From positions 186,001-250,000 of the IMG/VR virus record IMGVR_UViG_3300045125_000071: 64,000 nt of DNA; one strand, given 5' to 3'. The position numbers and the translations under genes are program-made. The notes below the pieces were generated by a model, which did no database searches, was not told the origin of the DNA, and saw only the letters and a program-made list of their open reading frames with translations. Positions 10,390 to 50,815 of the stretch are shown one piece after another (position 1 is the first letter of the stretch; each line of letters starts with the position of its first letter).

Positions 10390-10982
10390 ATGAATTTGGT
10401 AAAAAAATTAATGTCGGATTTTTTTTCTGTATTTCTATTTCAGGGAATTGCTTTTTGAATTCCATAACATCAAAACGTTTTGTGATAAAATGAAAACCAT
10501 TTTTGGTTGGAATAATGGCTACTACTTTATCACCCAGTTGGTCTACAATAATCAATATGCTGTTTTATTGCCAATGTGGACATCCATAATCTGGTATCCA
10601 CATCAACGACCCACCTTTTCTCATTTGTTTTGATTTGACCAACAACGGAGTCAAAAACATTCTTTTGATTTATTTGTCCTGATTGAATCCGATTGACAAT
10701 CTCGGTTATCATGTTCATACCAACATCCCTATGATTCTGTTTCTGAACATGGATATATGCACGAGCCTTGAAGAATTCACACATCTGCTTTATCTCCTCG
10801 TATCTCTTCTCCAGGTATTCAATTGAGTTGATGCAATATGTTTTAATTGTCCTAACCGATTGATGATTATCTTTCTCACCTTCGGGTTGGTCCTTTTTCC
10901 TTTTGAGAATGAGACAAAAATAAAAATCACCCTCGTTTTCGAAGTTCAACAAGGGTTTGATTAATTCGATGTTGTCAATCAT
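10390..10982 (-). CDS. Conserved hypothetical phage protein (frameshifted C-terminus)
   Basis: DFYFCLILKRKKD...IKTYCI...KRWVVDVD continues in another frame into GYHLITKRFD. Confidence 0.5.
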
Positions 10983-37899: not shown

Positions 37900-39353
37900 T
37901 TAATTTGTGTAAACATATACGCAATCAATTGCCCTTGACATTGCAACATACTTTAATTGTTGTTCAACTTGTTTATCGCTGAACCTTTTAATCGTATCTT
38001 CAAGAACAAAAACTCTACTGTAAGTTCCGCCTTGTGATTTATGAATGGTATGTGCATAACCATAACCCAATGTTTGCTTTATTTTATTTTTTCCAGAAAC
38101 ATCTTTGATGTTTTTCATAAATGCTAATTGTGATTCAATCATTCTAGCTTCTTTAAAACAAATCATCGCCTTATAATAATCTTTATCTTTCATAAATTGG
38201 CCACCCATTCTATTTTTATCCGCAATAGCTTCAACAAATAATTGTATTTTATCATTACTTTCATTATTATCAACAACAAAAATATTTTTGAAACTATCCT
38301 CATCATTCATAAGGTTTTTAAGAATAAGATAAAAACCAGAAAATTCAACATACTCATTTTCTATTTTTACATTTTTAGTACCCTTATTAACTTCATGGAC
38401 CAGATAATCACCACTATTGATTATCAAGGGTTCTTTTGTATCATAATCAATATCAAAATTATTATAACCCATCAATATATCGTTGACAACAATTTGTTCA
38501 TCTGTTTGAAATAATACATTTCTCACATAATCGTTTAAACTGTTTACACCAGAATTAGTACCAGATAAAATCCTGAAAAAACAATTTATTTTCATTGAAT
38601 TCTTTAGATTTAAAATTCTCATTTATGATTTTTCTAGCACTATCCGAATCATTCACATAATGAACACTACCATTATCTCTAATATCTGTTATGTAAGAAA
38701 AATCACCACCTAACCTTAAAATTGTAGATTCTTTTAAAATTGGATTATCGCCAGTTCTTTCAACTTTGGTCAATTGTATTTTTTTACCTTTTCTAAAAAC
38801 TGGTGAAACATCAGAATCTTTTACAGGTTTAAGTTGTGCGGGGTCACCTACATATATGATTTTAATTTTATACTTCGTTTTTCCAAGTTTCCAAAAATCC
38901 ATATAAAGATTCTGACACCATGGAAGATTCATCAACTATTATAATATCTCCACGTTTAATTTTTTGGTTTATTTTTTTGCGAATTCTAAATCCTTAATAT
39001 CGTAATCACCATTTTCAAATTTTAATATCTGGTGCTAACCCAAATAAAGAATGTAGTGTTATTACTTGAGCACCAGGATTTTTCATTTTAGTTACGGCAT
39101 TTGCCCTATGCGTTGGACTTGTATAATATTTTTTTACTTTACGGTGTTGTAGGTATTGGTCAAACAACGCAATAATTGTTGTTTTTCCTGTGCCAGCATA
39201 ACCCAAAAGTGTTATTTGGTTATCAAATTTTTCAGGATTTTCAATAAATTCTTCTAATTTTAATAACGCGTTTTTTTGTTCATCATTTAAACCAAATGAT
39301 AAATTTATGCTAAAACCATTTTTAAATTTGAATACATTCTTATTTTTTGCCAT
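37900..39353 (-). CDS. dda: Dda/RecD-like SF1B helicase (frameshifted)
   Basis: GYAGTGKTT, SPTHRA, IVDESSM, VGDPAQLKPV, LTKVERT, YAHTIHKSQGGTY, YVAMSRA. Confidence 0.85.
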
Positions 39354-39388: not shown

Positions 39389-41257
39389 ATCTTTTTGGTC
39401 TTTGTAAATTTCTTTTAAATAATGATTTGTTTTACTGTAAACTTCTTTTATATCATTTTGAAACTCGTCATATGTTTTTTCTTTACAACAACCACATTCT
39501 TCAAAATCTAAAAAATACATAGATGATTTATTTGAATAACAAGTACCAGTCCGACCATCATACCAATCACTACCTACTTTATAAATTGGGAATCTAGCAC
39601 CATTTTTTCATCAAATCGGTATTCGATTTTTTCTATCGTACTTTTATTATATCCACCCAATGAGTTTTGGCCCATTGATGTGTAACTATCCATGTATACA
39701 ACATCACCTACTTGTTTACTTTCCATTTTTTCTTTTCTTTTTATACTCAACGGTACCTGCCGTTCCAATGAACGCACCGATTAATGCGGGTATCAATAAT
39801 GATTTATCCTCAACGTAGTTTGTGGTGACCACCGCACCAGCCAACATAATACTTGCTGACCATATTCCAGCTGCAATCGATTTTCTTTCTTCGACTTTCA
39901 TGAAATAAACAGTCCAACATACATCTGTTAGAATCATCGCAAACATTACAATAAAAAACTTAATAACGTAATCCATATTTAATTTATTATATTAATTTCA
40001 GCTTCTGTTTCAATCACCACTCTAGCACCACAAGATAATAATGGTTTGGAGTCACAACCTGGTCCACCATAAATGATTCTGCTTGGACCCAATATCTCAA
40101 CTTCATTACAATAGATATTCTTTCTTCCTTGTTTGATTGTTATCACTGGAAGATTTGTGTCCTTTGTTTTATTGGACCTTATGTTATGCTGATTGACATG
40201 AATTCGTGTTTTCATATTTTATAACCACATTAATGCAAGACATAACATTATAAAAAAACAATTGTAAAACCGAATGATAGCCATACTAAAAATTGAAATA
40301 TTTCTATAACCCTATTCAAAAATCCTAATTTATTTTGTTTAGAAATGACTAACAATCCAGTACAAACGGACATTAAAATAAAACTAATTATAAGTACCGT
40401 TGACGAAATTTTACTTGCTAATAAAAGTATTTCTTTCATAATTTTTATTTTTTAGGTTCAATATAATCAATTCTTGTTATCCTATGTGGTGGTATATGTC
40501 TATACGCTATATTAGCGCTATATTCTTCTTTGGGTAATTCATATGAAAAACCAGTTCTAAAAACATTATCAATAAACATTTTTCTTTCATCGTAATTATT
40601 TACCCTATTAAGGTTAACCTCATACCAGTTTTCTCGGTTGTAATCTTCTTGGTAATATATGTAATAGCGAGCGGGATAATATTTTTCTTGATTTTCCATA
40701 TTTTTGCGTTAATCAATAAAAATTACACAATTTTTTTTGTTTTTCCAAATTTGGTAGGTGTTTTTTTCTACCAAACAATACATACATCTACGAGTTCCTG
40801 ATATGAGTCCCATAACTTATGATTTAAGGTCTTCTTCAATTATATTGACCATCTCATCAAAAGAAACATTTTCGTTCTTCTGCCAATTTTTTTATATAAT
40901 CCTCACTTAGTTGAATATACGATGCCTTACTGTTTCTATTTGAATCTTCGATTAGTTTACTTGCTTCGAGTAGTTTTGATACTAATGATTTTTGATTATT
41001 CATAAACTTCTATTTTTTTGTTTTTTTCATTTTCAATATATGATTTTAACTTATTAATACACACCTTTACTTTACCATCGATGTCAATAACTGTTGGATT
41101 TTCTAATGCCCGTAAAAAATCATGTATTGTTTCTTCTGTTATGTTTCTTTTAATATATTTAATCCCATCATAAAGATGTTCCGCAGTATCAATATAATCA
41201 GAAGTTTCTAATATATTAAGGATTTCCAAAATAGTTTCTCGCCTTTTGCTATTTTCG

Positions 41258-41627
41258 TTATTCATAAACTTCTATTTTTTCTCCGTTGTATGTCTAATGT
41301 GATTTGTTTGGTTGGAATTTTATACGGTGTATTATCCACATTACTTGGAATCATGATACTGGATAAGAGTCCGTATTTCTCTTTCCATATAGGAAGCGCA
41401 AGTTGATATCGCTCATCCAAACTCAACTCTCGTTCTTCAATTTTTAATCCCCATCTATCGGAGAAGCCTTTATCGGTTTTGATTTTGTTGATGAATTCAT
41501 CTTTTGTTAATCTCAAACCAATTTCTGTCATTTTTTCTTTTGACATATTTGGTAAAATCTTCGCATCTTCTATTAAATAAATCCAATAAACCTCATCAAT
41601 GATTTGGTTGTATCGTTCTTTACTCAT
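41258..41627 (-). CDS. KERYNQII-family protein
   Basis: KERYNQIIDEVY...EFINKIKTD..FSDRWGLKIEERELS...IPTKQITL...KIEVYE (last part frameshifted). Confidence 0.65.
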
Positions 41628-43550
41628 AACTTACATTTTTACTCTTTATATTTGTTTGCTAAATAGGTTTTATCCTCACCATCCCAACATATCTTGTCGA
41701 TATAATGTGGTCCGAACCATTCGTGTCTGCCATCGATTTCTACACGATACCCAGTGCTCCATATCTTCTCCGCATGTTCTCTCGCTTTCTCTGCGGAGTC
41801 AACATCGTATGTGAACACGTTTCCGTTCTTAAAGTAAATGTACATTTTCATGGTTGAATATTTTATTTTTTCCGTGATTTTATTTATCAGTCAAAACAAA
41901 GTGTACCATCGGTATTTTTTTATCGTTGACATATACTATAACAGTATCTGTTTTTATTGTTTTATGGTTATGTGATTGAAACTCTACTCTATACTTTACA
42001 ATATCTATAAAATGTTCGACCATTTCTGTTGAAATATTTTCGTATTCAAAAAAGTATGGTCTGTTGATATACATCGACCAACACTAAATAATTGTTCAAC
42101 GACATGATTAACAATTCGAGTTGTTCTACCAGTTTGTCTATTATTTTCCATAATTTTTTATTTAATCTTTTAATAACTCTAATACCCTTTGCTTCAGTTC
42201 TTCAAACTCCATATCTGTATGCGGGCGTTGGAAACACTCAAATTTAACCCCACCCCCCGTAAATTCATCCGCAGTTACTAAAATGTGATAATCTTCCGCA
42301 AGGGGGGATTTGTTTAATTTTTCCGAATACGCCTCTATTATTTCTAAATTACTTTTGGTAATCTTACTATAAAAATTGGTTTGCTCATGGTTTTGTTTTG
42401 ATTTTAAATTAAAAAGAGTACTCTCGCACTATAGTATCCTCCCCTATTTTATTGTTAAAAGTATCATTGTGTCTCATGTATAATCTTTTCAGCCTCTGCA
42501 ATATCTTTTGGGAATGAAGATAAATAGGATATAACATTTGTCAAAATTGTATTTCCTCCAATATCCTGCCAAACTTCACTTACTGTTGATTCGTACTGAT
42601 TATCTAGCGTGTACACTTTACTTGAGGAATGAAGACTGTACATTTCTTTGCTTCAATCGTGTATTTTTTCTGAATAATTCTGTATTCCATAGTTTATCAT
42701 TTAAAAGGTATATTAATAACTAATCCGTGTTTCATATCCATTATCTATTTTCATAAACTCATCAATCTCTGCCTAGGATAATTCTTAGGAAATGCACAAA
42801 ATTTTGTTGCAGTTGGAGCCATATTTTGAATGTTCTCCTATCCTCTTTGTCAAGATTAACATGATTGGTTCATTGGATGTGTCATATATTTTATTGCCGA
42901 TTTTTACTTTCATAATTTATTGTTTTTATTTAAATCTTCGAATTGGTTCTTTTTTGAAGAAAAACCCAACTACATCAACATAAGGAAGTAGTTCTTTGTC
43001 TCCTTCAATTGTTGTGTTTCCTTTACTAGCCTTCAACATTATTATTTTGAATCCAAATTTATTGGATAACCACTTGATGAATTTTACGTGTACTCTATTC
43101 ATTTGTTTTTTAATTTATTTTATTAACAACAGGAAAAATTCCTTCATGTCTCAAGTACTCATAGTTTTCCATCTCTTCGGGTTTATCAATTGGCATTTGA
43201 ACCAAATTAACTGATGTTTCATTGTATTCAAGTAATGTCATCGTCATAACGTATAAGATTCCTTTATTGTTTTTATGTTCTAATTGTTCTTTAAAATGAG
43301 AAAGGTTTAATGTTTCCATGATTTTTAATTTAATTTTCTTTTTTAACTATCTCGTACTCTTGAGTCTCATCATCATCATCACTCAAACATTTTATTTCGA
43401 TTCCGAAATTTTGTTTGAGAATCCAATTAATTGTATCCACCACTTCCCATGGTGTGTAATCAGTATTAATTTCAAATTTGTTTTTTTTCATGATTTTTTA
43501 ATTTGTTTGTTAATAAATGTATCAAATATATTTGTAATTACCAAATTTAC

Positions 43551-44381
43551 CTATATCGCAATTTCTAAAGGTGAAACAATTTTTAGAATATTTTCGGTTC
43601 CTAAAATATCAAAATCATTTATTGTGTAATCATAGAAATTTTTGTTCTCTTTCAACATTAATTTTGGTTGTACATTCATTGGTGTTCTATTTAATACCTC
43701 ATTAAGTGCATCAAAATGTCTGTCATATATGTGAAGATTTTGAACCAAATGACAAAATTTACCAACCCTATACCCACAATGTCCAGCAACCATCATTTGC
43801 AATGCGACATATTGAATCTTGTTTATATACCCCGCGACCAAGTAATCGTTGCTACGTTGAATCAATGTCATATCTAATATTAAACCATCATTATCTTTTC
43901 TGACCGAAAACATAACCTCGTATGCACAAGGAAACAAACCTTTTGTTTCAGACAAATCATGGTATTGAAACATGTTTATGATATGTCTTCTACCGAATGG
44001 GTCATCAACTAAACCTTTTAACTTTTCATCAATTAAGTTATATCTACATATTGTTGCACCGTACCTTTGTCCGATTGTGTCATCACCAATATTCCATTCA
44101 TCCCACCAATTAATACCCATTTCTCTTGCAACTTTAAGTGAGGATGTTTGTTTTTGGTATATCCAAAATATTTCTTTGATTCCAGTTTTGATTGCAGTAT
44201 TTCTTAGTGTAGGAATTGGATATTCACCTTTTGATATATCATATTCTTCGAATACTCCAGTGATAAACTTAGAGTGTGCTCGAATACCGTCAGGATATTT
44301 TGCTCTTGGATTTTCATCGAAACAGCCTTCGTTGATAATTCTGTTGAGATTATCAATATAATACTTGTCTGCTTTATTCAC
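43551..44381 (-). CDS. thyA: Thymidylate synthase
   Basis: IGQRYG, RRHI, LFPCAY, QRSNDY, NKIQY, NLHIYDRH. Confidence 0.95.
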   Translation of the reverse strand: MNKADKYYIDNLNRIINEGCFDENPRAKYPDGIRAHSKFITGVFEEYDISKGEYPIPTLRNTAIKTGIKEIFWIYQKQTSSLKVAREMGINWWDEWNIGDDTIGQRYGATICRYNLIDEKLKGLVDDPFGRRHIINMFQYHDLSETKGLFPCAYEVMFSVRKDNDGLILDMTLIQRSNDYLVAGYINKIQYVALQMMVAGHCGYRVGKFCHLVQNLHIYDRHFDALNEVLNRTPMNVQPKLMLKENKNFYDYTINDFDILGTENILKIVSPLEIAI

Positions 44382-45237
44382 GATTTAAAATTTTATACTT
44401 CCATTTATATCCACCCGCAGTTTCGGCTTTACCCATACAAACATTACCAATATTTAAAATTTTTGTTTCATTTATTGCGTGAGATATACTTTCCCAACTT
44501 TTTATATAATTTCCAAATAAATCGTATTGGTCTACAGGTTTTCTTTTTCGATTCAGCATTTTTACATGGTATACCTTTCTTTATTTTGGATAGTGTTTCT
44601 GAAAATCCTTTTGGCTTAGGTTTTCTCATTTTTTGTTTGGTTTCCTCCGATAATTTCCTTCCTTTGAATGCGTTTTTAATTTTTTCCTTTGCTTCGGGTG
44701 AATGTGTCCATCCATTTTCCATTTTATACTTTTGATACTCGGATATTTTAAGTCTCCATTCTAAATGTCTTCTATTCGCTTCTTCCTCGCCATACTTCTC
44801 TACCCACAAAGCATACCTACCTTTTTTGTTAATGGTGTACCAATTTGTTTTAATGTATCTGATAATTTTTTTATTTGGTTTTTTCTCCTCTCTATTGCTT
44901 CTTCTTCCCCATATTTAGAAACCCAATAATTATATATTCCATTTTTTGCTATTTCATGTCCAATTTTTCTATCTCCTTCCTTACTACCTTCACTAATGTT
45001 ATAGCCAGATTCTCTGTCAGTACTATTATAATATTTTATCCAATATACCTCTCTTTCATTTAAATGATTTTCATCAACACATTCTTCTAATATATCTTTT
45101 TTAAAATTTTCTCTTCCATATTTTTTTATTGCCTTTATTAGTTTCAAACCACTACCATAATATGATGGATTGTTATTTTTATCTTGTCCAATGTAAATTT
45201 TTCCATCAATTAAATTTGTTGTTTTATAGATAATCAT
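44374..45237 (-). mobile_element. Free-standing GIY-YIG homing endonuclease (Seg-like) with NUMOD3/NUMOD1 tail; three track ORFs are one gene
   Basis: IIYKTTNLIDGKIYIGQ...YYGSG...EREVYWI...GYNI; HSPEAKEKI, LSEETKQKM; KPVDQYDL...TAGGYKWKY. Confidence 0.85.
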
Positions 45238-46776
45238 AGTAAATTATTTACTATAAATATCTTTCTATCTTATTTATTCTACATAATCCTATCTTTTTTT
45301 GTTATATAAACAATGGTCCTATCCTTTTTCGTATTTCCGAATCGTAGGATGTGTTCAACAAGTTCTAAATACTGACGGTCGATGTTATTATTCATATTCA
45401 ATTTCAAATGTATCGGGGTTAATGTATTTAATTTTTTTATCACCAGTTAAATCAACCATCTTATCATCAGGTATTCTATTTTTAATGATTAAATCTTTTA
45501 ACTCCTGTGATATATCAGGATTATTTAGAATTTCATCACGTAACTCTTCGTGTTTACGTGCTAATTCAGCTCCTTTCTCTATTAGTTTATCTATGTTATT
45601 CATTTTCGTTTTGTTTATTTATTAGTTGATAATTTAATTTATTGACGTAATAGTTATCATCACCATACCCATATTTAATTCTTGCTTCTTCAGCTTCTTT
45701 ACTTGTATTGAATGGCGCAAGTATTACTACATTCTTGTCTTTTCCGTGTCTCGGTTCTTTTTCATAAACCGCGTATTGTTCGCTATTCATTTTCGTTTTG
45801 TTTTAGCTTTAATAGACTTCATTAATGATTTGGTTGTATCTTTCTTTATTCATATACCATATTTTATTGTGTACAACATTGATTGAAGTTGGTATTTACT
45901 AATGTTATTGTCAAAAATTCTCCAATTACCAGAAGAATTATCAGAAGTGTCTAATTCAGCAACAACATCGCCATAAAAATAACTACAATTATTTTTTTTA
46001 TTGTATATTTCTACGGCTTGCTTTTTATTTTCAGCTTCTATTAACTGTCCATCAGTGTAATAAATTTCAGGAGATTCCATCAATCCTTCGCATTGCAATG
46101 CGACTATGTACTTACTTCATAAACTTCTGTAAGATTTTTTATGTTTATTAACCAATATTTTTCCCCGCTTTTACAACCAAAAACCGTTTCCTTTATCCTC
46201 AACACACGTTACCACTTTTCCATTAGGTTCTAAATCGGGTCTTAAAGAATCCCATGATGACTGCACTATAAATTTTTTACCAATATTACTCATAAACTTC
46301 TATTTTTTCGTCTTTGTGTGTTAGACTTATTTGTTTGGTTTCGATTTTTAATACCCTATTTTAGTTCCTCTAACTATATACATTACTTCATTCATGACCC
46401 TACCATCGATTATGGAATTTTGTCTTTCTTCTATGATTTGATAAACATGAGTATAATTTTTATTTATGAAATCCTCCAATTCTTCTTTCACTCTTGAAGG
46501 GTCTTCCATTTCTGAATAAGTTTTGGTTAAATCATATTTCCTCAAAATGGTATTTTATGCATAAAAACTGAATATCTATTCTTTTTGTAAATAAAATGAT
46601 GTGAATTTACAATTTCAATAGTTAGTGATAATTTATCCAACGGAATTATGTATCTCCATGATTTATGAATATCATCAATTTTAAGGGTTCGTGTTTCACA
46701 AAACTCATCAATTGATTCGTGCCACAATTGCCCCATATATCCACGCCAAGATTCTGTCCTTTCTTTTATAAATTCG

Positions 46777-47198
46777 CTATTCATAAACTTCTATTTTTTC
46801 GTCTTTGTAATGTAATGTGATTAGTTTGGTTGGGATATTTTCTTTATCACAATCTTCGTGAGTTGTATATTTCGACACATCAAATCCAACATTAAATTTA
46901 GGTCCGTCATCATTAATTTCCAATTCAACCCCATTCGATAATTTAGTGTATAGAATTTTTAATCTTTCCTTTAAATTCAACTCTCGTTCTTCAATCTTTA
47001 GCCCCACTTATCTGAAAACTCTTGGTCGGTTTTACTTCTTCTGATAAATTCTTGTTTGGTGTATGGTCTACAGCCGTCATCCTCAGTCTCTAAAACTTTA
47101 TCATACTTAGTATCCCACGATTGTAACATTCTACGTATATCTTTACAATACCTCTCATAGACTTCATCAATGATTTGGTTGTAGCGTTCTTTATTCAT
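46777..47198 (-). CDS. KERYNQII-family protein (one frameshift)
   Basis: ORFs 46998..47198 and 46777..47007 join at SDKWG/LKIEERE. Confidence 0.65.
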
Positions 47199-47393
47199 AT
47201 CTTAATTTTATTTGGTCATAATCTCTATCGTACCATTCACCATTTTCATTTTTATGGTTTCTAATAAGTTAGTGCTAACAATATCTCACATAATCCCACA
47301 CCTGAACAATCTCCTTTGTCCCACCTCTTGTAGTGGTTGAGAGTTTCACTATCTGTCATGTCGAGTAGTTCTTCTATCTTGTCTCTAATAGAT

Positions 47394-47782
47394 TTATCCA
47401 TATACTTCTATTTTTCTTCGTTGTGTGTTAGTGTGATTAGTTTGGTTGGGATATTTTGTTCACTTAATGATTCTTCTTGTGTTTTACCATGCCCCCACAT
47501 TAACATTATACGTAATCCTTCAGTACGTTCATTCCAAATTTGCATCCTCTCATCCAAACTTAATTCTCGTTCTTTTATTCCCAATCCCCACCTTTCGGAA
47601 AATTCTTGGTCGGTTTTCATTTTGTTGATGAATTCTTCATTGGTCATCAGTCTGGTTCGATTCTGTGATGGGTCATCAACGTGGTACTCGTAGTCAGGTT
47701 CTTCAAGAAAACCCGCGAATTTTGAATAGCTTTCGTAAACCTCGTTAATGATTTGGTTGTAGCGTTCTTTATTATTTTTCAT
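47394..47782 (-). CDS. KERYNQII-family protein
   Basis: Same three conserved blocks as 41258..41627. Confidence 0.65.
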
Positions 47783-48973: not shown

Positions 48974-49433
48974 TTAGATGTTTTTCTTCTCAATATATTC
49001 AAGGGTATTCTCGAATATAGTTTTAAGTTGTTTAGACATACCAAATCTTTGGGAATTGATTTCGATTGACCTCGCCATGTTCCCATCCTTGGTCCTTTCA
49101 CCAGCAGCCTTCCAATCGAAAACATCTCCATCAAATCGAATAGATTCATCCCATTGATGCGATTCTCATAGTGTTGCGGGTGATGACTATTAACGGAATA
49201 ATGATGGTCAAGAGCGGTTTAATCTGCCTGGTTGCTTCGGTATATTCCTCGCTCCCAAATGTTAAACCAGCAATAAGTGGTGTGACCTCATCAAAGGTGG
49301 ATTTTTCGGGTTCCTCCAATTTCGATTGGTCATGATTTTTTGCTCTTTCCAATAATTCACATGAAGCATTAATCAGATATTCATTAACCTTTCTGATGTG
49401 CTTCAATGTTTCTGCTGTCGAATCGTAATTCAT
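48974..49433 (-). CDS. HD-like (DUF5662-type) protein (frameshifted)
   Basis: HDQSKLEEPE...NSHHPQHY..RINGMNLFDLMEMF.DWKAA. Confidence 0.6.
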
Positions 49434-50815
49434 AATATTAATTTACCAGTTTATCGAGATTAATATCTCTTTCTTTTAAGATTTCCCAAAATCTTTCATA
49501 CACAGCATCCAACAAATCTTCTTTGGTTTCATATTTGTCAATAGACCATTCAAACCCTTTCTTTGTGTTGTGACTAAATTCCCACAATGATAATGCCATA
49601 TCGGTTGATTTTGACCATTCTCATATGTGCCTCAATGTCATCTGGTTCGTTTAGGTCGAACTCGAATATTCCTTTTGCCATAAATGATGGTTTTTTAAAA
49701 TGTAATCAAAAAATTTAATTCCCAAAATTTTTCCATATTTAATTTCCAAAATATTTTTTGGTGTTGGTGTATAATATGGATTATCAAAATCAGGTATATC
49801 AGGATAATATTTTTCCATACCTGTTTCGTAATTATTGAAGAACCAATAATCATAACGCTCAACATATTTTGCCTCCCTTTCGGTTATTTTGGTTTTCCAT
49901 TTTTTGGAAACTCATTATCCGTTTTAACTTTTTGAATGAAATCCTCTTTGGATAATGGTATAACAGTTTTATTTAAAAAATTATTATACGCCTTGTCCAA
50001 TATGTCGTCAAAATTATTTTTCACGATTACTCAGTATAATATTATTCCTTTGAAATCATAACCATCATTTTTATCCGCTTTTTCATGTTTACCATAATAC
50101 CATTCAGTATTGACATTTTCATTGAAAACCGATTCTTTAACATCCTCAACATCATCAAAACCACCCTCATAGCCACTGATTAACACTCTCATGTCTTCGG
50201 GATATGTTTTCAGAATTTCTATAAGCTCTTTGGTTGTCATATAAATGATTTATTCAAATATATTTAAAATTATTTTTCTTCTTTTAAAAATATTTAAACA
50301 ATTATACACAACATGTGACTCTTGAAATGTGTATAATCCATTATGTTTGTGCGTGTTGTAATGCTAACTCTATTAATTTAATAGCCATTTTTTTATCTTT
50401 TTGATTCGAATAACTTATTTTAATTCTTCGTGTGATTCAAATTCCTAATAATCCGTTGTATAGTATTTCCATAATGCAGTATTTTATTTCTATAATGTCA
50501 AGTTTACATGATTTATGGGATAGAAATTCCCAGCTCGAATATAATGCACCATACCAGAGGATATTGACAAGAGGTATGATGGGTCGAGAAAACCTGGATG
50601 GTTGCACGGTTTTTAAATGTTAATAAGGGGGCACCATTCCTCTGGACTGAAGAGACTGCAAAATACCTCTCGATATTGTTTTTACACGTTACAATAGGGT
50701 TAGTAGAATACACCCAAATTGTCCACGCAGCAGAGCCACATAGCATGAATCCGCCGAAATATTCTGGAAATTGGTGACCATGCTGTTGAATTCCCTGCTG
50801 GCATGGCTTCCAAAT

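What the first reader, a model, noticed from the sequence alone, without database searches (positions are those of the whole stretch)
40996..47415. A ~22-bp stop/start junction repeat shared by unrelated genes: cassette-like array
Seen: minus-strand AAAAATAGAAGTTTATGAATAA and close variants (encoding KIEVYE* and containing the next gene's ATG) recur at about 40996, 41258, 46112 (partial), 46286, 46777 and 47394. Some genes ending in it are unrelated to each other (40996..41265; 46348..46545 after a frameshift). Each copy launches a different downstream ORF, and ORF 40996..41265 is exactly bracketed by two copies. Inference: the junction is a standard plug for recombination and translational coupling, letting single-gene cassettes be gained and lost without promoters or an integrase.
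Basis: partly seen in the sequence, partly recalled or inferred. Interest (0 to 1): 0.65.

Follow-up and report, generated by a model that had tools for sequence, protein, structure and literature searches.

The report
Shared tail of ThyA-derived phage genes
The repeated 22-base stop/start junction is the conserved last seven codons of one multi-copy small-gene family, in whole copies and deletion remnants, and not a plug shared by unrelated genes; the family itself appears to be a cut-down thymidylate synthase, which is the unusual part.

Summary
The repeat is real. There are five copies with 0-2 mismatches (0.01 expected) plus one 13-nt partial copy. All lie in window 40996-47415, and nothing else in the 251-kb virus record matches.

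It is not a universal plug. Four copies end a ~63-nt homology block, the 3' end of one paralogous family of ~125-aa proteins. That family has at least 870 clusters in metagenomes, nearly all ending IPTKLITLTYxxE[KT]IE[VS]YE*. In an AlphaFold model KIEVYE is the last beta strand.

The fifth copy ends an unrelated ORF (D). In a relative, the D homologue is fused to a whole family gene, so the window copy is a deletion remnant. Similar remnants occur in two other phages.

The ATG inside the motif gives an 8-nt stop/start overlap. All 14 full-length family genes checked in six related contigs have it, so the translational-coupling idea is reasonable though untested.

The frameshifts in copies A and C resemble the homopolymer assembly errors documented elsewhere in this window.

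Unexpectedly, the family matches two insert regions of long phage thymidylate synthases (ThyA). It lies next to thyA and shares hypervariable "alleles" with thyA genes of other phages. This suggests sequence exchange between thyA and these mini-genes.

The parts
47394..47782 (-). Family gene A. ORF 47408-47782 plus its tail; junction copy at 47394-47415 (2 mismatches).
   Evidence: Family HMM E=8e-48. The tail is out of frame because the A-run has 5 A where relatives have 6.
46777..47198 (-). Family gene C, split into two halves by a 1-nt frameshift near 47001-47007. Junction copy at 46777-46798.
   Evidence: HMM positions 1-65 and 65-128 lie in two frames. The tail reads ...KDEKIEVYE*.
46286..46360 (-). 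Remnant F: only the last ~20 codons of a family gene. Junction copy at 46286-46307.
   Evidence: HMM positions 109-128 only, E=1.6e-4. The conserved Pro is lost (IETKQISL). The upstream ORFs 46348-46545 and 46542-46784 get no family-HMM hit.
46116..46128 (-). Partial sixth copy, an exact 13-nt core, at the end of ORF 46104-46205.
   Evidence: 0.01 expected by chance. Without the G of GAAGTAA the ATG frame would run into ORF 45850-46098 (read). Inference only.
45812..45853 (-). Remnant E: the first 14 codons of a family gene followed by a stop.
   Evidence: HMM positions 1-14, E=2e-4; tblastn.
41258..41627 (-). Family gene B. Junction copy at 41258-41279 (exact).
   Evidence: HMM E=9e-33. An extra G 36 nt before the stop shifts the frame; in the tail frame it reads TYNGEKIEVYE*.
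40996..41265 (-). ORF D: an unrelated body ending in a 23-nt junction copy (40996-41017, exact).
   Evidence: D homologues normally end differently (e.g. P0122 ends ...KSLGI). In P0124, P0125 and locus L010 the D domain is fused to a full family gene.
49654..50030 (-). Family gene G: diverged, in two frames, and without the motif.
   Evidence: HMM hits 49887-50030 and 49654-49911. It is a precise one-gene indel relative to L008.
40857..41003 (-). Downstream ORF started by the ATG of copy 40996.
47261..47401 (-). Downstream ORF started by the ATG of copy 47394. The same pairing exists in L015.
   Evidence: 64% identical to L015 8057-8164, the gene that overlaps family gene L015b by 8 nt.
46542..46784 (-). 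Downstream ORF started by the ATG of copy 46777.
46171..46293 (-). Downstream ORF started by the ATG of copy 46286.

Best explanation
The 22-nt motif is the conserved 3' end of a multi-copy family of small phage genes. It comprises the last seven codons (K-I-E-V-Y-E-stop) together with the overlapping ATG of the next gene. The window holds four full-length family members (A, B, C, G) and several decay products: a tail-only remnant (F), a head-only remnant (E), a 23-nt tail fused to an unrelated ORF (D), and a 13-nt trace. The peptide is the last beta strand of the protein. The bases ATGAATAA double as the stop of one gene and the start (Met-Asn...) of the next. Terminating ribosomes can therefore restart on the following gene; this step is inferred, not shown. 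Copies look alike because they are paralogues with a constrained C-terminus and strongly biased codons, not because unrelated cassettes use a common plug. Deletions that removed family-gene bodies left the tail behind, which makes neighbouring genes look 'bracketed'. The family itself is derived from a long-type phage thymidylate synthase (ThyA). It keeps the two variable insert regions and two flanking core strands, and it lacks the catalytic core.
For: Distribution: there are five copies in the whole record, all within 6.4 kb. Four of the five sit at the end of a ~63-nt homology block. The family HMM finds A, B, C, G, F and E and nothing else in 251 kb. Family size and C-terminus: 870 clusters at E<=0.001, nearly all listed members ending ...IPTKLITLTYxxE[KT]IE[VS]YE. 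In six related contigs all 14 full-length family genes end this way with an ATG 5 nt before the stop, and L008b carries the identical 22-mer. Structure: the AF2 model (pLDDT 84.6) has strands at 105-111 and 114-119, so KIEVYE is the last strand. D: its homologues end differently; P0124/P0125 and locus L010 show the order B-like gene -> D fused to a full family gene. Other remnants: L015 9843-9908 (tail only) and L017, where 18 nt of tail serve as the leader of the next family gene. Frameshifts: a conserved helicase and a DUF5662 gene are each spread over three frames. The two DUF5662 shifts, when aligned, are 1-nt losses in C3 and T5 runs. ThyA origin: the family HMM hits long ThyAs in two colinear pieces. 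hhalign gives 95.6% for the first piece. The top ESM-Atlas fold matches are viral ThyA clusters at TM 0.51 and 0.49.
Against: The nucleotide identity of the tail (21-22 of 22, also in another phage) is higher than the 40-60% protein identity of the genes would predict. Synonymous sites such as ATA (Ile) and CTA (Leu) are conserved, so a nucleotide-level role or gene conversion may add to plain paralogy. Two independent remnants (D in the window, L017) stop at almost the same left edge, the A-run. That could reflect selection for the junction or a deletion hotspot. The D-remnant reading rests on one short contig (L010) and three fused representatives out of 21. Frame relations in the window are uncertain because of homopolymer errors. 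PDB fold searches gave no ThyA match.
Confidence: 0.85

Rival explanations
1. One reading: the junction is a standard recombination plug at which unrelated single-gene cassettes are inserted and excised.
For: ORF D is bracketed by identical 23-nt copies. A second ORF (45596-45790) is bracketed by another exact 18-nt junction repeat. Gene-boundary indels occur between relatives. A 23-nt unit survives on its own in L017.
Against: The motif occurs nowhere outside the family's 3' ends or remnants, in the 251-kb record or in IMG/VR (two exact hits, both family-linked). D's bracket is explained by L010. Two junction pairs are conserved in distant relatives. There is no integrase and no hairpin or attC-like symmetry.
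Confidence: 0.08
2. The last ~23 nt are kept under their own selection as the translation-initiation or coupling region of the downstream gene. This would explain why tails survive when family-gene bodies are deleted. It is complementary to the best explanation.
For: The 8-nt overlap is present in 14 of 14 full-length family genes in relatives. Remnants D and L017 retain just the motif in front of an intact downstream gene. Synonymous positions in the tail are conserved. There is no promoter or terminator excess in the array, consistent with long polycistronic transcripts.
Against: The L015 remnant keeps the tail, but only 5 codons follow its ATG. F and the L015 remnant keep ~60 nt, not just the motif. 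Deletions ending in the A-run may simply reflect microhomology. No expression data are available.
Confidence: 0.35
3. Chance or convergence: an AT-rich genome with biased codons produces the same 22-mer independently.
For: All seven codons are the favoured AT-rich ones. ATGAATAA overlaps also occur at unrelated junctions in this genome.
Against: Shuffles give 0.01 matches against 5 observed. Homology extends 40 nt further upstream in four copies.
Confidence: 0.01

Closest known systems
PeSL mobile regulatory cassettes of T4-type phages (PMC2839356, PMC4122927)
   Same: Short repeated sequences in a hyperplastic region full of small ORFans. Recombination between copies is held to cause gene gain, loss and mini-circles.
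   Different: PeSLs are intergenic, consist of a sigma-70-like early promoter plus a stem-loop terminator, and are dispersed in many copies. This motif is coding, has no promoter, terminator or stem-loop, and exists only as the end of one gene family.
Stop/start overlaps with translational coupling in compact operons (ATGA, TAATG and longer overlaps; established knowledge)
   Same: The upstream stop lies inside the first codons of the next gene on the same strand, and this is conserved across relatives.
   Different: The overlap is 8 nt (ATGAATAA) and is locked to a conserved C-terminal peptide on one side and Met-Asn on the other. Coupling itself was not measured.
Integron gene cassettes with attC sites
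   Same: Promoterless single-gene units bracketed by a repeated element.
   Different: There is no integrase in the record and no imperfect inverted-repeat structure, and the repeat is part of a coding sequence.
Lactobacillus casei-type thymidylate synthase 'small domain' insert (textbook knowledge, recalled from memory)
   Same: The first half of the family matches the insert at this position of long phage ThyAs, including the ...EEFINKIKTD.EF..KWG block.
   Different: The family lacks the catalytic core, including the Cys-containing PPCH segment. It has its own start and its own C-terminal strand, and it is multi-copy. A sequence search against PDB chains found no ThyA.
Silent-cassette gene conversion systems such as Neisseria pilE/pilS (recalled from memory; an analogy for the novel case only)
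   Same: One full-length gene sits beside several partial copies that carry alternative versions of its variable segments between conserved blocks.
   Different: The mini-genes here have their own start and stop codons and conserved family-specific ends, so they are probably expressed proteins. Conversion events were not observed directly.

Membership tests
Paralogous gene family (ThyA-derived mini-genes) | Significant full-length similarity among the carriers of the motif | tested here: met
   Family HMM: A 8e-48, B 9e-33, C halves 1e-19 and 8e-17. 870 relatives at E<=0.001.
Paralogous gene family (ThyA-derived mini-genes) | Every motif copy belongs to a family member or a traceable remnant of one | tested here: met
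   F covers HMM positions 109-128. D's tail is explained by D-family fusions in P0124, P0125 and L010. The 13-nt trace at 46116 remains unassigned.
Thymidylate synthase (PF00303) | Match to the Pfam model and presence of the catalytic core | tested here: not met
   No Pfam hit at E<=0.01. The homology covers only ThyA ~86-139 and ~213-278, so the segment between them is absent. The family is derived from ThyA but is not a ThyA.
PeSL-type mobile regulatory cassette | Early promoter plus stem-loop terminator in an intergenic position | tested here: not met
   No promoter or terminator at the copies. Folding is no better than shuffles, z from -0.8 to +1.0. The motif is coding.
PeSL-type mobile regulatory cassette | Mini-circles or indels with joints in the repeat | not testable with these tools
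No near-identical relative was found.
Integron cassette / attC | Tyrosine integrase and a structured attC site | tested here: not met
   PF00589 is absent from the record, which CheckV estimates at 75% complete. No hairpin at the motif.
Translationally coupled overlapping genes | Stop of the upstream gene overlaps the start of the downstream gene on the same strand, conserved in relatives | tested here: met
   5 of 5 copies here; 14 of 14 full-length family genes in L006, L008, L010, L013, L014 and L015.
Translationally coupled overlapping genes | Downstream translation depends on upstream translation | not testable with these tools
   Needs reporter or ribosome-profiling experiments.
Gene-conversion cassette system (pilS-like) | Variable segments shared between the expressed gene and partial copies, flanked by conserved blocks | tested here: met
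   Variable core of the small domain: thyA_L006 vs window B 88%, thyA_L001 vs window A 68%. Second insert: thyA_L008 vs P0065 65%. A 24/24-nt shared block between thyA and a mini-gene of the same contig.
Gene-conversion cassette system (pilS-like) | Partial copies are silent, and conversion is seen within a population | tested here: inconclusive
   The copies have their own start and stop codons and conserved ends. No population data. L008 and L009 diverge inside a family gene, but that may be an assembly effect.

The most novel reading that the evidence does not exclude
The mini-genes and the neighbouring long thyA form an exchange system. Conserved blocks shared at nucleotide level (around DAYKNY, EEFINK...KWG, RELS.EER and NIPT..I.L) flank two hypervariable segments. 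These segments move by recombination between thyA and the mini-genes, and between phages. A phage would thus carry a small library of alternative surface inserts for its thymidylate synthase, or decoy/regulator proteins displaying them. In each of the five contigs that hold both, the thyA variant is unlike every mini-gene in that locus (0-28% identity), while 43-88% matches exist in mini-genes of other phages.
Probability: 0.3. Interest if true: 0.8.

Novelty: new variant of a known kind. Interest (0 to 1): 0.5.

Why it matters
For the scan, this is a caution. A short repeat at gene junctions can be the conserved end of a decaying paralogue array, and direct repeats that 'bracket' a gene can be deletion scars rather than insertion sites.

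For phage biology, the by-product is more interesting. A large family with no Pfam or PHROG match (at least 870 clusters) turns out to be a thymidylate synthase stripped to its two variable inserts. It sits beside thyA in large phage contigs, several over 200 kb, and shares insert variants with thyA genes of other phages.

If exchange between thyA and these mini-genes is real, it points to diversifying pressure on a nucleotide-metabolism enzyme, for example from a host defence or an inhibitor that recognises it. It would also point to a cassette-like way of answering that pressure.

Tried and rejected
- Pfam and PHROG scans of the ten ORFs around the motif gave nothing useful.
- A phage-collection DNA search found only thyA matches and no close relative. 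A protein search with the largest window ORF found nothing.
- PDB sequence search, Foldseek PDB and VIA wide gave no convincing fold match. The ESM Atlas feature search gave no hit.
- A degenerate back-translated motif search in the first three loci found nothing.
- The promoter/terminator scan and RNA folding around the five copies were no better than shuffles.
- The idea that the frameshifts in A, B and C are programmed slippage was rejected. Relatives have in-frame tails, some without an A-run, and the window shows homopolymer losses in conserved genes.
- That F and the L015 remnant both start at HMM position 109 was considered as evidence for a breakpoint hotspot. It was rejected as a detection artefact, because the profile cannot see the variable region upstream.
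Full report
**What the window is.** The window is bases 186,001-250,000 of a single 251,358-bp virus record: an IMG/VR contig, linear, with a CheckV completeness estimate of 75% and about 30% G+C. The region of the finding is a minus-strand run of small ORFs.

- The 22-mer is found at 40996, 41258, 46286, 46777 and 47394 with 0-2 mismatches, against 0.01 matches in shuffles.
- Allowing four substitutions over the whole record adds nothing.
- The partial copy at 46116-46128 shares an exact 13-mer, again with 0.01 expected.
- Every copy contains an ATG five bases before the stop, and each ATG opens a different ORF.
- ORF 40996-41265 (D) is bracketed by two identical 23-nt copies.

**What the copies belong to.**
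- Four of the five copies end a block of about 63 nt that is 67-79% identical between copies. A second block of about 70 nt is shared at the 5' ends of the same genes.
- These are the ends of a paralogous family: A (47394-47782), C (46777-47198) and B (41258-41627). A diverged member G lies at 49654-50030.
- A profile built from 111 database relatives finds exactly these in the six-frame translation of the whole record. It also finds a tail-only fragment F (46289-46360, profile positions 109-128) and a head-only fragment E (45812-45853, positions 1-14). It finds nothing else.
- The family is large but unnamed. A word search gives 870 clusters at E<=0.001, mostly 115-140 aa, with no Pfam or PHROG match.
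- Nearly all listed members begin M[NS]KERYNQIIDEVYENY and end NIPTKLITLTYNNE[TK]IE[SV]YE.
- An AlphaFold model (pLDDT 84.6, pTM 0.71) puts KLITLTY and KIEVYE into the last two strands of a small sheet.
- So the motif encodes a conserved terminal beta strand.

**The junction in relatives.**
- In six independent related contigs (L006, L008, L010, L013, L014, L015) all 14 full-length family genes end this way with an ATG at -5 from the stop. Gene callers start the next gene there, and the downstream genes differ.
- L008b carries the identical 22-mer although the proteins are only about 40-60% identical.
- The 8-nt overlap is not special to the family. In L008, six of the 22 consecutive same-strand gene pairs I tallied from the gene table overlap by 8 nt, three of them non-family. 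The window's genome has other ATGAATAA junctions with unrelated upstream sequence.
- Any gene that overlaps an ATGAATAA start in this frame must end in [YHND]E-stop.

**The two 'unrelated' carriers.**
- D has 21 relatives in the exhaustive search. They share the body but not the tail; for example P0122 ends ...KSLGI.
- In P0124 and P0125 the D domain runs straight into a complete family protein, and in P0126 into the start of one.
- In contig L010 the order is a B-like family gene, an 8-nt overlap, then a D homologue fused to a full family gene ending KIEVYD. This is the window's order B -> D, except that the window keeps only the last 23 nt of the gene after D.
- D's tail is therefore best read as a deletion remnant. 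It lies just after two A7 runs, so even its reading frame is uncertain in this assembly.
- F is a tail-only remnant that has lost the nearly invariant proline.
- The same kinds of remnant occur elsewhere. L015 9843-9908 is a tail whose upstream 187-aa gene ends in FIPN-stop; against the family consensus this looks like a 4-nt loss in CCAACCAA.
- In L017 the 18 nt between an unrelated gene's stop and a family gene's ATG are the motif's first 15 nt plus three more bases.
- The only other exact IMG/VR hit, L016, ends a family-like gene and starts a short-type thyA.

**Frameshifts.**
- As assembled, A, B and C each carry one frameshift.
- Against L008, a one-piece 480-aa helicase and a 153-aa DUF5662 gene each map to the window in three frames.
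- The two DUF5662 shifts are 1-nt losses in a C3 run and a T5 run.
- I treat the frameshifts in A (A-run) and C (TT) as probable assembly errors. B's extra G is not in a homopolymer and remains open.

**Turnover and recombination.**
- Some junction pairs are old. A and its downstream gene are paired in L015 as well (64% identity), and B -> D is paired in L010.
- Others differ. G is a precise one-gene indel relative to L008, lying between a stop codon and the next ATG.
- The homology between the window's thyA and L016's starts exactly at the start codon inside the overlap.
- L008a is a mosaic: its first half resembles B and its second half resembles A.
- Two scaffolds from one sample are 99.9% identical for 10.57 kb and then part 38 nt into a family gene's conserved 5' block. 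That may be biology or an assembly break.
- Together these show gene-boundary turnover and recombination within family blocks. They do not show a plug used by unrelated cassettes.
- No integrase, promoter, terminator or RNA structure accompanies the motif.

**What the family is.**
- The first related loci were hits inside a thymidylate synthase gene.
- The family profile matches long phage ThyAs (373-402 aa) in two colinear pieces. Profile positions 10-65 match ThyA about 86-139, the 'small domain' insert. Profile positions 64-126 match ThyA about 213-278, a long insert in the hairpin after the PPCH segment.
- hhalign gives 95.6% probability for the first piece.
- The two best ESM-Atlas structural matches of the model are viral ThyA clusters, at TM 0.51 and 0.49 over 98 and 96 residues.
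- ThyA's NIPTRAISLMWNQRSVD aligns with the family's NIPTKLITLTYNNETIE, so the motif sits where ThyA has its QRS.D segment.
- The catalytic core between the two pieces is absent.
- Family genes lie 1-3 kb upstream of thyA in L006, L008, L014, L015 and L017, and near thyA in the window.

**Shared variants with thyA.**
- In the variable core of the small domain, thyA of L006 is 88% identical to window gene B and thyA of L001 is 68% identical to window gene A. ThyAs resemble each other at 28% or less there.
- In the second insert, thyA of L008 is 65% identical over 48 aa to family member P0065.
- At DNA level, thyA of L006 is 79% identical to B over 129 nt. thyA of L014 shares a 24/24-nt block with a mini-gene of its own contig.
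- Within each of five contigs, the thyA variant is unlike every mini-gene in that locus, at 0-28% over 11 pairs.
- All family members share one architecture, yet the variable segments match different thyA genes. The simplest reading is repeated exchange between thyA and the mini-genes. This is an inference; no exchange event was observed.

**Verdict.** The repeat is real and is explained: it is the conserved tail of a paralogous family, in whole copies and remnants, with a built-in stop/start overlap. The plug-and-cassette reading is mostly not supported. The ThyA-derived nature of the family, and its variant sharing with thyA, is the part worth following up.

Noticed in passing
window 43551-45443 (minus strand): The thyA locus looks like a homing-endonuclease-linked gene replacement. 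A ~27-codon N-terminal remnant of a long-type thyA lies in ORF 45279-45443 (56% identical to the start of L008 ThyA). It is followed by a GIY-YIG endonuclease gene in three frames (44374-45237), then a complete short-type thyA (43551-44381). That thyA is 74% nt-identical to L016's and 73.6% identical to uncultured phage LR756504. This phage thus seems to have lost the long ThyA from which its mini-genes derive.
   Followed up: partly
window 45597-45614 and 45784-45801 (minus strand): A second exact junction repeat, ACAAAACGAAAATGAATA (0.04 expected by chance), brackets ORF 45596-45790. That ORF matches the N-terminal extension of longer family proteins such as P0024 and P0120. Its own last ~14 residues resemble a family N-terminus.
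   Followed up: partly
window 37906-39341 and 48977-49433: Conserved genes (a helicase and a DUF5662 gene) are each spread over three frames. The two DUF5662 shifts are 1-nt deletions in C3 and T5 runs relative to L008. Only one ORF of 350 aa or more exists in the 64-kb window. The assembly has systematic homopolymer errors, so any frameshift seen here needs read support.
   Followed up: yes
window 49711-49757: A 24-nt tandem duplication inside the tail of family gene G. G has lost the YE-stop ending and runs about 30 nt into the next gene.
   Followed up: no
L008 / L009, position ~10573-10579: Two scaffolds of one metagenome are 99.9% identical for 10.57 kb and diverge 38 nt into a family gene's conserved 5' block. 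Afterwards L009 resembles another family copy (95.8% over 71 nt). This is either a recombinant strain variant or an assembler break at a repeat.
   Followed up: partly
L014 1-9100 and L008 4389-6632: Related large phage contigs carry notable genes. L014 has TonB-dependent-receptor-like ORFs (CarboxypepD_reg, OMP beta-barrel, Plug) and a ferredoxin-dependent bilin reductase (PF05996). L008 has an intein-containing DNA methylase. These may be host clues, but the host remains unknown.
   Followed up: no
L004 6225-6255: In a phage where D has no family neighbour, the D homologue's 3' end still resembles the motif, with a 1-nt and a 6-nt gap. This could be chance in A-rich sequence or an older trace of the same junction.
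   Followed up: no
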